A DNA stretch of 63,412 bases from Stylophora pistillata (GCF_002571385.2 NW_019218144.1:104073-167484); one strand, 5' to 3'; positions 4,170 to 63,412 are shown, counted from the first letter of the stretch. Notes: generated by a model not told the origin, from the letters alone. Translations and numbers: made by a program.

Positions 4170-4873
4170 TCAGTCCCAATGTTCGTCGCGAGTCTCAGCT
4201 GGCCGGTTTTTCTTTATTTTTCCCTTTAAAACCCTTTCAAGAGATCTACACTTCCATTTTGCGTTGTTGATTTGTCGAGGAGTCAATGCCACGTCATAAA
4301 CTTGCAGGCATGATATACGACCGCGAAAGTTGCGTTCATCCCCAATTCTCGCTCCCATTCTTACAGAATATTTAGTAGCCAACGTAATATTCCCAATAAG
4401 TTTAGCATCCTCTAGTTTTCCATCTATCCATAAGCTTGCCCGTCCAGTGTTCTGATGGTAAATTGCACCGACGAAATTCCACTTGTTCGGTATGATGTGC
4501 GAGCTTTTCACGGTAAGGAATTTATGTGCTCCTTTTTGTCCACGAGAATTGAAACGGGCAAAAAGGTTGCTAGGTTTGCTCATCCAGAGGGCAACGCCCC
4601 ATCCATTAGTTTTGTAGTTAAAGATTGGTCCTGGATGTCTTGGTAAAATCCATGCCAGTAAAGTAAGAGAAGTATTCGTTTCCAATTGTCCGTTGTGTGG
4701 GAACTCGATGTAGCTCTTCGGAGCTCCCAAAAAGGAGAGAGAATTTCCGCTCTGATTCAAAGGTCCTGCTGCAGGCACAACATTGTTAATTATTCCAGGT
4801 ATATTTCCACCGATCACGTCTCTTGCCTCATATTTGGCGTTGAGAGGATAAAGGGCGACTGGCTCCGGAAAAA
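4170..4873 (-). CDS. Terminal exon of gene 2: LamG/concanavalin A-like domain
   Basis: FPEPVALYPLN...SYIEFPHNGQLET...LTLLAWI...WNFVGAIY...RMGARIGDERNFRGRISCLQVYDVAL, the same subfamily as the gene 4 LamG exons. Confidence 0.9.
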
Positions 4874-62400: not shown

Positions 62401-63412
62401 TCGGTGTGGGAGGCGAAGAGTTCTGATTGTTGTGACGACGGGACAGTGGGTCGATAGGGTAAAGAGACCAGCCGAGGCACTTAAGGGAGCTGGTGTGGAG
62501 ATATTCACGATTGGTATTGGCAGCATCAGAAGGACCAGTCTGTTACGAGTTACAACTGACACAAAGCATGTATTTATGGTTGGGTATACACAGCTTTTGT
62601 CCATTGTAAAAACATTAAAGGACAGGATTTGTTACTCTCCTGGTAAGTTTAATTTAGGGACATGTGTCTTCACTACTGTGAAGTGACGGGACCATAGTAC
62701 TTTCTGATCACTCGTGACCTTCCTAAAAAACCCTTTTTTTCGTCTTCGGAGCAATCCGTTTTAATTAATATCTGTCCTATAACCTTTATCAAGATCAGAT
62801 CTATTTATCATCAGTAGCTGAGCTTAGTTGCCGCGTTAAATTTAACGTTCAGTGTAATTCTCGGGATGGTTATCAGCACACTAACCACAGCAATGAGACA
62901 ACAGCAATTTCTGATTACTCGTGACCTTCCTAAAAACCCTTAATTTCATCATCAGAGCAACTAACCATGCCTACCATGCATTTGATAATTATTCGTACTC
63001 TCTTTTCTTAGTTATTCGCCGTGGAGCAGTTGCAGTTTATCAGCTCACCGGCGCCTCCAAGAACCGTGACACCAGTGGATACGTCAACCCACCTGCCACA
63101 TTTGTAGGTGTTTACTACGCACGTGGCCCAGACAATCATCCACAAGGAGCCCTTTCCTTTAGAGGAACAAGAAACAGTTATGTTTTGATTCCCAATAACG
63201 GCTGTCTGGACACAAGATACTCACTTACAATTATCATGTGGGTGTATCCCGAGAGCAGTGGACCTTTGTTACATTTTAATCCAAAAGGCTGGGGTGTTCA
63301 CGTGTGGATCATAAGTCAGTTCAGACTTTTCGCTCGGTTTGTACCTCGCTCACGCAAATCTGTGACAGCTGTATACAAAAAGATAAAGCCACGCCAGTGG
63401 AACTATATACGA
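25550..63412 (+). CDS. Giant secreted Arg-rich VWA/LamG multidomain protein; 3'-incomplete, at least 46 exons, about 4,780 codons, in-frame TAA at 51338
   Basis: 5' exons 25550-25682 (signal peptide MRSSSLLRAVLFLLVASHVLT), 26700-26969, 27633-27875, 28753-28792, 28945-29432. Then domain exons (listed separately) with micro-exons 32696-32764, 33521-33550, 36084-36113, 37924-37974, 39473-39514, 40802-40828, 42187-42216, 43766-43795, 44947-44997, 47449-47496, 48918-48935, 50463-50513, 52914-52943, 54994-55014, 56869-56898, 58708-58734, 59049-59078, 60504-60548, 61678-61728. All GT-AG with consistent phase. Confidence 0.85.
27633..27875 (+). CDS. Gene 4 exon: WSC-like domain
   Basis: FKSLGCWKDTWDRAI...LMKCAEAA...FSLQNGGQCFSG...KYG.SDSC; completed by micro-exon 28753-28792 (DGEGGPWGNEVY). 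Confidence 0.85.
28945..29432 (+). CDS. Gene 4 exon: acidic P/T/E-rich linker ending CPVC
   Basis: ORF 28865-29443 trimmed to ag|g...c|gtgag; rich in E/D. Confidence 0.8.
29587..30088. mobile_element. TTAA-flanked non-autonomous DNA transposon (Kolobok-like termini)
   Basis: TTAA-ggtggttc ... gaatcacc-TTAA. Confidence 0.6.
31826..32389 (+). CDS. Gene 4 VWA domain 1
   Basis: DLAFLIDGSAS...VVVITDG...IYCLGVG; phase 1-1 exon. Confidence 0.92.
32928..33190 (+). mobile_element. tRNA-derived SINE with CORE-like middle region
   Basis: A/B-box-like head, then gtgttgttaggcaagacactttactctcacagtgcctctc...aaatggg resembling the MIR/CORE domain, and a tttac tail. Confidence 0.65.
34062..34685 (+). CDS. 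Gene 4 LamG-like domain 1
   Basis: AFYPL...GPDG...FPNKGKLD...LLAWVYP...WNYVGASYD...FRGRVSCMQVY. Confidence 0.92.
35251..35426. mobile_element. MITE with 21-bp TIR, nested in a palindromic element (about 35125-35465)
   Basis: aatagcccatttccgaattac ... gtaattcggaaatgggctatt interrupts the right arm of the host hairpin. Confidence 0.75.
36412..37041 (+). CDS. Gene 4 LamG-like domain 2
   Basis: Same motif set; phase 1-1 exon of 630 nt. Confidence 0.92.
37238..37557. mobile_element. tRNA-like-sequence-containing retroposon with terminal fold-back and 12-bp TSD, nested in a MITE (about 37056-37590)
   Basis: TSD agtagagagtat at 37226-37237 and 37558-37569; hairpin about 37236-37360; tRNA-like ggcttgttagctcaattggtagagc...ggttcgaatcccgtccaggcc at about 37416-37487. 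Confidence 0.75.
38205..38480. mobile_element. Palindromic non-autonomous repeat (hairpin 38208-38325)
   Basis: aacaattattccac ... ccaacgaggcgcgtagcgccgagttgg ... gtggaataattgtt. Confidence 0.7.
38648..39211 (+). CDS. Gene 4 VWA domain 2
   Basis: DLGLLLDGSGS...LLVVTGSRS...EIFAVGMG. Confidence 0.92.
39867..40493 (+). CDS. Gene 4 LamG-like domain 3
   Basis: Motif set conserved; phase 1-1. Confidence 0.92.
41226..41864 (+). CDS. Gene 4 LamG-like domain 4
   Basis: Motif set conserved; phase 1-1. Confidence 0.92.
42952..43518 (+). CDS. Gene 4 VWA domain 3
   Basis: DLGFLIDGSGS...RGKTYIG...MLTDG; intact MIDAS. Confidence 0.92.
43988..44623 (+). CDS. Gene 4 LamG-like domain 5
   Basis: Motif set conserved; GRLFC subtype. 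Confidence 0.92.
45116..45658 (+). CDS. Gene 4 VWA domain 4 (degenerate MIDAS, CGRRR subtype)
   Basis: DLGFLVDASRV...GRPRCGRRRVLVVLATGES. Confidence 0.92.
46277..46945 (+). CDS. Gene 4 LamG-like domain 6 (NNGCLD subtype)
   Basis: 669-nt phase 1-1 exon. Confidence 0.92.
47095..47228. mobile_element. Short MITE-like repeat with tatccagtggata palindromes; degenerate relative at about 2595-2680
   Basis: ggccccggttgt...acaacagggc ends and repeated tatccrstggata. Confidence 0.55.
48066..48635 (+). CDS. Gene 4 VWA domain 5
   Basis: DLGFLIDGSSS...RGGTYIG...VLTDG; intact MIDAS. Confidence 0.92.
49139..49774 (+). CDS. Gene 4 LamG-like domain 7
   Basis: GRVFC subtype; 636 nt, like domain 5. Confidence 0.92.
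50097..50410 (+). mobile_element. tRNA-derived SINE
   Basis: ttagcccaatggatagtgcg...gagggttcgagccccggccggacc head with A/B boxes continuing into a non-tRNA body. Confidence 0.6.
51291..51839 (+). CDS. Gene 4 VWA domain 6 (CGRRR subtype) with in-frame TAA at 51338-51340
   Basis: CRARIDLGFLIDGSR*TGSVTFQRIIEYVKETVRRF...; otherwise open, with intact splice sites. Confidence 0.85.
52121..52789 (+). CDS. Gene 4 LamG-like domain 8 (NNGCLD subtype)
   Basis: 669 nt; close paralog of domain 6. Confidence 0.92.
53456..54201 (+). CDS. Gene 4 VWA domain 7, split by a phase-2 intron (53456-53687, 53864-54201)
   Basis: DLGILIDGSRS...INRI AG|gtttgt ... ccag|A YLPRGRGSYIG...LSDG. Confidence 0.88.
55602..56231 (+). 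CDS. Gene 4 LamG-like domain 9
   Basis: Closest to domain 3 (PP.A, NYPAI.G.RPG). Confidence 0.92.
57126..57761 (+). CDS. Gene 4 LamG-like domain 10
   Basis: Closest to domains 2 and 4 (RMGA.IGD). Confidence 0.92.
59409..59972 (+). CDS. Gene 4 VWA domain 8
   Basis: DLGFLVDGSGS...RGGTRIG...LITDG; intact MIDAS. Confidence 0.92.
60845..61486 (+). CDS. Gene 4 LamG-like domain 11
   Basis: GRLFC subtype. Confidence 0.92.
62103..62642 (+). CDS. Gene 4 VWA domain 9 (CGRRR subtype)
   Basis: DLGFLIDASSS...GKPRCGRRRVLIVVTTGQW. Confidence 0.92.
63012..63412 (+). CDS. Gene 4 LamG-like domain 12 (NNGCLD subtype), truncated by the window edge
   Basis: ttag|TT ATT CGC: IRRGAVAVYQL...GPDNHPQG...IPNNGCLDTRYS...WVYP...WNY; not in the ORF track. 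Confidence 0.88.

What the first reader, a model, noticed from the sequence alone, without database searches (positions are those of the whole stretch)
4170..63412. Three-gene cluster in which two small genes are partial paralogs of the giant gene: candidate multi-component secreted matrix or adhesive system
Seen: gene 2 shares with gene 4 a WSC-like exon of identical length (243 nt), the following W.NEVY micro-exon ending in phase 2, an ATG just after an ag|gtga acceptor, and the same LamG subfamily. Gene 3 shares the CPxC-x-C / VWA / C-x-G-x-GG...CLC cassette, including an identical 69-nt exon. All three have signal peptides. Inference: the cluster arose by duplication and exon shuffling, and may encode subunits or chain caps of one extracellular polymer (glue, mucus, cnida or skeletal matrix).
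Basis: partly seen in the sequence, partly recalled or inferred. Interest (0 to 1): 0.8.

Follow-up and report, generated by a model that had tools for sequence, protein, structure and literature searches.

The report
Coral matrix-gene cluster of partial paralogs
Three neighbouring coral genes for secreted, strongly positively charged matrix proteins really are relatives built from shuffled domain exons, and the neighbourhood is kept in other corals, but nothing shows that they form one material, and one of them is broken in a sister coral.

Summary
The shared anatomy is largely real. Genes 2 and 4 both have a 243-nt WSC-like exon followed by a W-x-NEVY micro-exon that ends in phase 2. Genes 3 and 4 share a cassette: CPxC, micro-exon, VWA, then a 69-nt G-x-GG…CLC exon. 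That exon is equal in length only, with 49% nucleotide identity.

An RNA contig shows gene 3 is a separate spliced gene of 323 aa, with its own stop codon and poly-A signals. Its VWA is sister to the giant gene's first VWA (support 96).

Gene 2's LamG belongs to the same basic subfamily, but its closest paralogs lie on another contig, C364 (support 99). Its micro-exon runs into the assembly gap, so its acceptor is unread. Synteny and a gap-free orthologue support continuity across the gap. Gene 2's signal peptide is unverified.

The order gene 3 then giant gene is kept in three other coral assemblies. Gene 2 is linked in one assembly. It is a stop-bearing LamG remnant in a sister coral and carries extra domains in another.

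Duplication plus exon shuffling is supported. The "one polymer" reading is not supported: in four RNA runs gene 3 was covered and the giant gene's first exons were not. This is an ordinary but uncharacterised extracellular-matrix gene family. Other notes from this scan cover the same giant gene.

The parts
4170..4873 (-). Gene 2, last exon: Laminin_G_3 domain plus TGA stop (4172-4170). AATAAA at 4153.
   Evidence: Pfam PF13385 at 60 bits. Acceptor in phase 1 and stop codon. Tree.
5117..5545 (-). Fragment resembling a retrotransposon reverse transcriptase, inside gene 2's last intron. Not part of the gene.
   Evidence: Open-frame translation. Judged from the sequence, not scanned against a family library.
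5868..6806 (-). Gene 2, Lys-rich exon: 939 nt, phase 1-1, net charge +27, no Pfam family.
   Evidence: 41.5% identity over 313 aa to the matching exon of the orthologue in L060. Splice sites. No Pfam hit.
7551..7762 (-). Gene 2, TSP1 exon: 212 nt, phase 2 to 1.
   Evidence: Pfam TSP_1 at 21.5 bits, with a WSxWS motif. Borders read. Orthologous exon in L060.
8427..8458 (-). Gene 2, readable 32 nt of the W-S-NEVY micro-exon. Its 5' end and acceptor lie in the gap.
8459..8973 (.). Assembly gap (N). It cuts the gene 2 micro-exon and the intron before it. Not filled.
   Evidence: Continuity is inferred.
9609..9851 (-). Gene 2, WSC-like exon: 243 nt, phase 1-1.
10170..10217 (-). Gene 2, putative 48-nt exon reading …SEIFEIKGK, phase 1-1, proposed by homology. 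The true first exon is unknown.
   Evidence: the same motif ends the exon before the WSC exon in C364, in the L060 orthologue (L057 shows it for gene 4's orthologue) and in gene 4.
14210..15884 (.). tRNA genes between genes 2 and 3: tRNA-Lys(UUU) 14210-14283(+), tRNA-Lys(UUU) 14573-14646(-), tRNA-Asp(GUC) 15813-15884(+). They serve as synteny anchors in other corals.
   Evidence: Conserved blocks.
17831..22139 (+). Gene 3: 7 exons (17831-18086, 18419-18442, 18526-18721, 20209-20379, 21010-21209, 21731-21799, 22084-22139). It encodes 323 aa with net charge +23, one VWA whose MIDAS site reads E-A-S-A-S, and a TAG stop at 22137. AATAAA at 22192 and 22198.
   Evidence: Model and frames. An RNA contig joins 21799 to 22084 and ends at 22193. 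Orthologue intact in L057-L059.
25550..25682 (+). Gene 4, first coding exon, encoding the signal peptide. Donor in phase 1.
   Evidence: 84% amino-acid identity in L057 and 55% in L063.
26700..26969 (+). Gene 4, Pro-rich exon ending …VYHIRGK.
27633..27875 (+). Gene 4, WSC-like exon of 243 nt.
28753..28792 (+). Gene 4, 40-nt micro-exon reading …GGPWGNEVY, phase 1 to 2.
28957..29432 (+). Gene 4, acidic exon ending CPVC plus one base. The acceptor could be 28900, 28945 or 28957; all three keep the frame.
31461..32764 (+). Gene 4, the cassette shared with gene 3: 27-nt micro-exon (31461-31487), VWA1 (31826-32389) and the 69-nt G-x-GG…CLC exon (32696-32764).
33521..63412 (+). Gene 4, 30-nt linker exon, then alternating single-exon Laminin_G_3 and VWA domains. 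Each domain has net charge +19 to +43. The gene runs off the window and continues to about 222 kb on the contig.

Best explanation
The locus holds three separate genes of one scleractinian family of secreted, strongly basic extracellular-matrix proteins. The family is built from phase-1 domain exons (WSC-like, TSP1, VWA, Laminin_G_3).

Gene 4 is a giant 'beads on a string' protein: signal peptide, Pro-rich exon, WSC-like exon, micro-exon, acidic exon, CPxC, VWA1, CLC exon, then many LamG and VWA domains.

Gene 3 (323 aa) arose by duplication of the segment around the giant gene's VWA1. It then gained its own signal-peptide exon and its own terminal exon, and it is now a conserved, independently transcribed gene.

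Gene 2 is WSC-like, micro-exon, TSP1, Lys-rich exon, LamG. It is another family member lying head to head with gene 3. It gains and loses domain exons between corals and can be lost altogether.

The neighbourhood is kept because the genes are old local duplicates, not because they are shown to work together.

Shown here: the anatomy, the paralogy, the independence of gene 3 and the synteny.

Inferred: that the proteins are secreted, and that they act as polycationic matrix or adhesive proteins that bind polyanions or collagen-like partners through their VWA and LamG domains.
For: - Domains.
- Exon borders and open frames: gene 3; gene 4's first ten exons; gene 2 downstream of the gap.
- RNA: a 1085-nt contig from run X2 splices 21799 to 22084 over a GT..AG intron and ends at 22193, just after the TAG at 22137 and at the AATAAA at 22192. 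Its length fits the seven-exon model plus about 58 nt of 5' UTR. No joint runs into gene 4.
- Gene 4 has its own signal-peptide exon, conserved in two other corals.
- Trees. VWA: gene 3 plus its orthologue is sister to VWA1, support 96. LamG: gene 2 groups with C364, support 99, inside a basic clade of 38, support 95. WSC-like exons: one clade, support 94.
- The cassette is unique to genes 3 and 4 in 213 kb scanned.
- Family members elsewhere follow the same plan: C364, C62 and C454.
- Synteny. L057-L059 are collinear with the window. In ERZ25067868 the gene 2 orthologue lies 35 kb from gene 3, head to head, and the orthologue of gene 4's signal-peptide exon follows gene 3. In ERZ25071802 gene 3 and giant-type LamG exons lie on the same strand of one contig.
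- Charges.
- Nearest solved VWA relatives are collagen VI alpha-3 and mussel byssus PTMP1.
Against: - Gene 2's 5' end and signal peptide are not established, and its expression was not tested. One of its exon borders lies in the gap.
- The VWA tree lacks VWAs from contigs C45, C62 (186 kb) and C78. Their N-terminal exons are about as similar to gene 3's as VWA1's is. They could not be fetched.
- Gene 3's VWA has two introns while VWA1 has none, so intron gain or loss must be assumed.
- Secretion and matrix function are inferred from domains only. No proteome or cell-type data could be linked.
- The upstream 905 nt of the X2 contig lie outside the stretch that was laid. They are matched to the model by length only.
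Confidence: 0.8

Rival explanations
1. The three products are parts of one extracellular polymer. The giant protein is the chain. Gene 3 is a stand-alone copy of the giant's N-terminal CPxC-VWA1-CLC junction module and caps or nucleates disulfide-linked multimers. Gene 2 is a second accessory subunit.
For: - Gene 3 keeps exactly the Cys-bearing junction module of the giant protein: a CPxC, which is a CxxC-type motif, plus C…C around the VWA and CLC.
- That module is 87-94% conserved between two genera.
- The order gene 3 then giant gene is conserved in three other assemblies.
- All three products are strongly basic.
Against: - Gene 2 is a remnant with an in-frame stop, shared by three samples, in the sister coral where genes 3 and 4 are intact.
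- Gene 2's domain content differs between corals.
- Its LamG is closer to that of a gene on another contig.
- In runs X2 and X3 gene 3 is covered (depth 9-13), while the giant gene's signal-peptide and Pro-rich exons have depth 0. This is weak evidence, because contigs drop rare transcripts.
- There is no direct evidence of any interaction.
Confidence: 0.12
2. Gene 2 is not a working gene in this genome. It is either a decaying relic, as in the sister coral, or a scaffolding artefact that joins a WSC-bearing piece to a LamG-bearing piece across the gap.
For: - The gap cuts an exon.
- The 12 readable bases next to the gap (L-P-P-P) differ from the G-D-G-E-G-G-P seen in three homologues.
- No convincing signal-peptide exon was found.
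- The two VWA exons of the orthologue in L060 are missing.
- The gene is a pseudogene in a close relative.
- Transposon fragments lie in and around it.
Against: - Every readable exon is open, and the phases fit from the micro-exon to the stop: 394 + 234 codons with no stop.
- Both sides of the gap are neighbours, in the same orientation, in the collinear relative.
- A gap-free orthologue has the same order on one strand: WSC exon, 40-nt micro-exon, TSP1 exon.
- A poly-A signal follows the stop codon.
Confidence: 0.15
3. Gene 3 is not a separate gene. It supplies 5' exons of the giant gene. The 69-nt exon ends in phase 1, and the giant gene's Pro-rich and WSC exons start in phase 1, so read-through splicing would stay in frame.
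For: The phases are compatible, the strand is the same, and only 3.4 kb separate the two.
Against: - The RNA contig splices the 69-nt exon to a terminal exon that has a stop codon 54 nt in and poly-A signals, and the contig ends there.
- No joint into gene 4 was seen.
- Gene 4 has its own conserved ATG and signal-peptide exon.
Confidence: 0.04

Closest known systems
Collagen VI alpha-3/alpha-5/alpha-6 N-terminal VWA arrays (beaded-filament matrix proteins)
   Same: Long tandem arrays of matrilin or collagen VI type VWA domains in a secreted protein. It is the best solved-structure match to VWA1 (E 2e-79 summed over repeats). Cys residues flank each VWA.
   Different: No Gly-X-Y collagen helix was seen in the window's open frames. 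Here the VWAs alternate with Laminin_G_3 domains, each domain is extremely basic, the N-terminus carries a WSC-like domain, and many MIDAS sites are degenerate.
FACIT collagens XII, XIV, XXI and XXII (VWA plus TSPN/LamG-like N-terminal domains)
   Same: VWA is paired with a LamG-fold domain in an extracellular protein. This comparison is from general knowledge, not tested here.
   Different: Those proteins have one TSPN domain next to a collagen helix. Here there are dozens of VWA-LamG pairs and no helix. The LamG here matches Pfam Laminin_G_3 with a weak pentraxin hit.
Mussel byssus proximal thread matrix protein 1 (PTMP1)
   Same: A small secreted matrix protein made of VWA domains. It is the second-best solved match to VWA1 (E 4e-22). 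It is comparable in size and idea to gene 3 as a small VWA matrix component.
   Different: PTMP1 has two VWAs and no CPxC or CLC flanks. It comes from a different phylum. No functional link was tested.
[quoted passage not shown]
   Same: Coral extracellular proteins assembled by domain shuffling from TSP1, VWA and laminin-G-type domains.
   Different: Those architectures are VWA x3 + TSP1 repeats + F5/8C, or EGF + laminin G. No WSC-VWA-Laminin_G_3 giant protein is described in those papers. I could not match accession numbers.

Membership tests
VWA domain (Pfam PF00092) | Profile match above Pfam's gathering score. | tested here: met
   Gene 4 VWA1 scores 124 bits. Gene 3's exons score 36.9 and 34.9 bits against a cutoff of 23.8; its third exon scores 23.4.
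VWA domain (Pfam PF00092) | Intact MIDAS metal site (D-x-S-x-S … T … D). | tested here: not met
   Gene 3 reads E-A-S-A-S, also in its orthologue. The giant gene's VWAs are mixed: many are intact (DGSGS…T…TDG) and several are degenerate. This feature marks ligand binding, not membership of the fold.
Laminin_G_3 / concanavalin-A-like lectin fold (PF13385) | Profile match above the gathering score. | tested here: met
   60 bits against a cutoff of 27.6, for gene 2 and for gene 4's LamG1. There was no match to solved structures by sequence.
WSC domain (PF01822) | Profile match above the gathering score (27.8 bits). | tested here: inconclusive
   20.7 bits (gene 2), 25.8 (gene 4) and 26.9 (L060 orthologue), all just below the cutoff. 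There are only 4-5 Cys. No solved relative was found by sequence. I therefore call it 'WSC-like'.
Thrombospondin type 1 repeat (PF00090) | Profile match above the gathering score, plus the WSxW and Cys pattern. | tested here: inconclusive
   21.5 bits against a cutoff of 21.6. The W-S-S-W-S-S-W-S-P-C motif is present.
Collagen VI / FACIT collagens | A Gly-X-Y triple-helical region. | tested here: not met
   None was seen among the open frames of 60 aa or more in the window. Only the window was examined, not the rest of the giant gene.
Functional gene cluster (co-regulated parts of one system) | Conserved linkage in other species. | tested here: met
   Genes 3 and 4 are linked in L057-L059, ERZ25067868 and ERZ25071802. 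Gene 2 is linked in ERZ25067868. In ERZ25067556 no gene 3 or gene 4 exon lies within about 26 kb upstream of gene 2's WSC exon.
Functional gene cluster (co-regulated parts of one system) | All members retained together, and co-expressed. | tested here: not met
   Gene 2 is a stop-bearing remnant in the sister coral. Gene 3 is covered by RNA contigs while gene 4's first exons have depth 0 in the four runs laid. The expression part is weak evidence.

The most novel reading that the evidence does not exclude
Gene 3 is a conserved, free-standing copy of the giant protein's N-terminal CxxC-VWA-CLC junction module. It would control, by capping, seeding or catalysing, disulfide-linked assembly of a giant polycationic VWA-LamG filament. 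Scleractinians might use that filament as an adhesive or as a polyanion-binding matrix, for example against acidic skeletal proteins or sulfated glycans. The conserved gene 3 then giant gene tandem would then be a two-part assembly system.
Probability: 0.12. Interest if true: 0.7.

Novelty: new variant of a known kind. Interest (0 to 1): 0.35.

Why it matters
If correct, the report corrects the three gene models. Gene 3 becomes a defined 323-aa gene. Gene 4 has a true start at 25550. Gene 2 gains an overlooked 313-codon exon and has an exon border lost in the gap.

It also shows that the cluster belongs to a larger, unnamed coral family of polycationic WSC-like/VWA/LamG proteins, with further members on contigs C364, C62 and C454.

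The family shows matrix-gene evolution by shuffling of phase-1 exons. Between corals the same gene gains or loses VWA, TSP1 or discoidin exons, or dies. The family also gives candidates for coral adhesive, mucus or skeletal matrix.

The specific claim that raised the score, one multi-component polymer, remains untested and is slightly disfavoured.

Tried and rejected
- I first took the open frame 6807-5857(-) for a transposon. It is a conserved exon of gene 2.
- I considered gene 3 as 5' exons of gene 4, since the phases fit. The RNA contig and gene 4's own signal-peptide exon reject this.
- I considered a scaffold mis-join at the gap. It is unlikely, given the collinear relative and the gap-free orthologue.
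- Pfam found nothing for the Lys-rich exon, gene 3's exon 1, or gene 4's acidic, Pro-rich and signal-peptide exons.
- Sequence searches of solved structures found nothing for the LamG or the WSC-like exon.
- A 25-aa own-genome search with the 69-nt exon found only itself. It missed even gene 4's copy, so it was too insensitive to use.
The VWA tree is therefore incomplete.
- The look-up of the Montipora protein P0011 was not on record.
- Walking 26 kb upstream of the gene 2 orthologue in ERZ25067556 found only a Mutator-type transposon and unrelated frames.
- Two literature searches found no description of this architecture in corals.
- The large protein search with gene 3's exon 1 gave ten exon-sized clusters at 40-70% identity. 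One is named only 'hypothetical protein' of Desmophyllum pertusum. No full-length model was found.
- Joined (spliced) models were built only inside local scripts, for frame checks, a local tblastn and the trees. They were not sent to database, family or folding tools. Those searches were done exon by exon, by reference.
- The gap was not filled.
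Full report
WHAT THE WINDOW IS

The window is G000:C360:104073-167484, from a 398-Mb eukaryotic genome in 5513 contigs. The nearest public sequences are from scleractinian corals: Montipora, Oculina, Desmophyllum and Tara Pacific coral metagenomes. Organism names were coded in the run search. N runs lie at 8459-8973, 13407 and 35467.

GENE ANATOMY

Pfam confirms the domains:
- On the minus strand: a WSC-like exon, a TSP1 exon and a Laminin_G_3 exon (gene 2).
- On the plus strand at 18-21 kb: one VWA split over three exons (gene 3).
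- From 27.6 kb onward: a WSC-like exon followed by single-exon VWA and Laminin_G_3 domains that run off the window (gene 4).

Own-genome searches show that the array continues to about 222 kb on the contig. Four domain exons in it contain in-frame stops.

- Both WSC-like exons are 243 nt with AG/GT borders: 9851-9609 and 27633-27875.
- Both are followed by a W-x-NEVY micro-exon that ends in phase 2.
- Gene 3's exon 1 and gene 4's acidic exon both end C-P-x-C plus one base.
- A 24-nt or 27-nt micro-exon follows, then the VWA (567 or 564 nt), then a 69-nt phase 1-1 exon reading G-x-GG-x-L…CLC.
- Both motifs occur only in these two genes within the 213 kb of family loci of this genome that I scanned.
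- The two 69-nt exons are equal in length but only 49% identical in DNA.
- The 243-nt length is shared by other members of this WSC subfamily.

THE GAP

In gene 2 only 32 nt of the micro-exon are readable (8458-8427). They contain no AG. The exon is 40 nt in gene 4, in the paralog on C364 and in a gap-free orthologue. The acceptor, and about 8 nt or more of the exon, therefore lie inside the gap. The frame across the gap cannot be read, and I did not fill it.

Three lines of evidence support continuity:
- The pieces on both sides of the gap are neighbours, in the same orientation, in collinear scaffolds of a related coral (L057-L059, 71-83% DNA identity).
- A gap-free contig of another coral (L060) carries the WSC exon, the 40-nt micro-exon and the TSP1 exon on one strand, in that order.
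- The phases fit. The WSC exon ends in phase 1 and the micro-exon ends in phase 2. The TSP1 acceptor 'aacag|T' takes phase 2.

Downstream of the gap the frame stays open through the TSP1 exon (7762-7551), a Lys-rich exon of 939 nt (6806-5868) and the LamG exon (4873-4173), ending at a TGA stop. I first mistook the Lys-rich exon for a transposon. The 12 bases next to the gap read differently from the homologues, which is an open point.

GENE 3 IS A GENE OF ITS OWN

I laid four RNA runs on 21700-27699.
- A 1085-nt contig from run X2 joins the 69-nt exon to 22084 across a GT..AG intron and ends at 22193.
- A contig from run X1 covers 22115-22299.
- No joint reaches gene 4.

With these borders the seven-exon model gives 323 aa, a TAG stop at 22137 and AATAAA signals at 22192 and 22198. 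The contig length equals the model's exons plus about 58 nt of 5' UTR. The part of the contig upstream of 21700 was matched by length only.

The related coral has every exon intact. Its VWA exons are 90-94% identical in protein (one, aligned over a longer stretch, 68%), and the 69-nt exon is 87% identical. The large protein search found exon-1 homologues at 40-70% identity in ten clusters, one of them from Desmophyllum pertusum. Gene 3 is therefore widespread in stony corals.

GENE 4'S START

The ATG at 25550 opens a canonical signal peptide, with a donor at 25682 in phase 1. The exon is 84% conserved in L057 and 55% in L063. Ten exons from there to LamG1 read open with GT-AG borders. The paralog on C364 follows the same plan: signal-peptide exon, Pro-rich exon ending F-x-I-K-G-R, then the WSC exon.

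GENE 2'S START

This is unresolved. There are two candidates:
- An in-frame ATG at 9888. Its hydrophobic stretch is simply the translated polypyrimidine tract.
- A 48-nt exon (…EIFEIKGK) that would need a further upstream exon.

DOMAIN TREES

- LamG, 48 exons of this genome. Gene 2 groups with two LamG exons on contig C364 (SH-aLRT 99). That group sits inside a clade of 38 (support 95) that also holds the giant gene's LamGs and those of a second multi-LamG gene on C62.
- WSC-like exons. Gene 2, its orthologue, C364, gene 4 and C454 form one clade (support 94), unresolved inside.
- VWA. Gene 3 and its orthologue are sister to the giant gene's VWA1 (support 96). VWAs from C45, C62 (186 kb) and C78 could not be fetched and are missing from the tree.

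So gene 3 is, as far as tested, the closest paralog of a segment of the giant gene. Gene 2 is a family member but not the giant gene's closest relative.

SYNTENY

- Tara scaffolds (three samples) are collinear with window 11-30844. They keep gene 3 and gene 4's first exons. Window 4976-16140 is replaced there by about 900 bp, and the remaining gene 2 LamG exon carries a shared in-frame stop.
- ERZ25067868: the gene 2 orthologue lies 35 kb from gene 3, head to head. The same tRNA-Lys and tRNA-Asp genes lie between them, and the orthologue of gene 4's signal-peptide exon follows gene 3.
- ERZ25071802: gene 3 and giant-type LamG exons lie on the same strand of one contig, 135 kb apart.
- ERZ25067556: the gene 2 orthologue is complete and carries two extra VWAs. 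No gene 3 or gene 4 exon lies within about 26 kb upstream; a Mutator-type transposon sits there.

PROPERTIES

- The giant gene's domains are extremely basic: VWAs +19 to +35 and LamGs +23 to +43.
- Gene 2: LamG +16, Lys-rich exon +27.
- Gene 3: +23 over 323 aa.
- LamGs outside the clade, and the VWAs on C364, are near neutral.
- Gene 3's MIDAS site reads E-A-S-A-S.
- The closest solved relatives of VWA1 are collagen VI alpha-3 and mussel PTMP1.
- No paper in the library describes this architecture in corals.

READING

The cluster is real and old, and it was built by local duplication and shuffling of phase-1 exons. The proposal that the three products form one polymer is not supported:
- One member is dispensable in a sister coral.
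- Its domain content varies between corals.
- In the four runs laid, gene 3 was covered while gene 4's first exons had no depth. This is weak evidence, because contigs drop rare transcripts.

One idea stays open. Gene 3 keeps exactly the giant protein's CxxC-VWA-CLC junction module, under strong conservation, so it could act on the giant's assembly. That is inference only.

PROCEDURE NOTES

Spliced models were joined only inside local scripts. Database, family and fold tools were given single exons by reference. Nothing in the gap was filled.

Noticed in passing
window 14210-14283(+), 14573-14646(-), 15813-15884(+): There are two tRNA-Lys(UUU) genes in inverted orientation and one tRNA-Asp(GUC) gene between genes 2 and 3. 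The same tRNA types lie next to the orthologous genes in three other coral assemblies, so they are useful synteny anchors.
   Followed up: partly
window 22900-23300, 25100-25500, 27300-27530: These short stretches have word depths of 10^4-10^5 in all RNA runs, with many rearranged joints. They are high-copy repeats, probably small transposable elements, sitting in the gene 3 to gene 4 spacer and in gene 4's second intron.
   Followed up: no
window 12914-13780(-) and 5117-5545(-): These are open frames resembling retrotransposon reverse transcriptase. One is 289 aa with a single N at 13407. The other is a C-terminal fragment inside gene 2's last intron.
   Followed up: no
window 3360-3584(+): This Cys-rich open frame downstream of gene 2 is conserved in protein in two other corals: 68% over 62 aa in L057 and 49% over 72 aa in L060. 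It is the subject of another note of this scan (s1-776273).
   Followed up: partly
window 51293-51829 (C360:155365-155901); C360:174528-175148, 189009-189650, 207219-207836: Single in-frame stop codons occur inside otherwise intact domain exons of the giant gene: one TAA in a VWA and three TAG in LamGs. All exons are phase 1-1, so skipping such an exon would keep the frame.
   Followed up: no
G000:C364:15494-38110: Two tandem copies of a mid-sized family member lie here: signal-peptide exon, Pro-rich exon, 243-nt WSC exon, 40-nt micro-exon, Cys-rich exon, several split VWAs, a Gly/Ser-rich repeat exon and a LamG. Their VWAs are near neutral in charge. They hold the closest paralogs of gene 2's LamG.
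   Followed up: partly
G000:C360:224721-235871: Downstream of the giant array lie at least four more VWAs, each split by an intron. Three of them are nearly identical. This may be a further gene of the family.
   Followed up: no
L064:540-965 and 2590-2883 (ERZ25067868): Discoidin (F5/8 type C) exons lie on the same strand just upstream of the gene 2 orthologue's WSC exon in that coral. This may be another domain-shuffled form, or a neighbouring gene.
   Followed up: no
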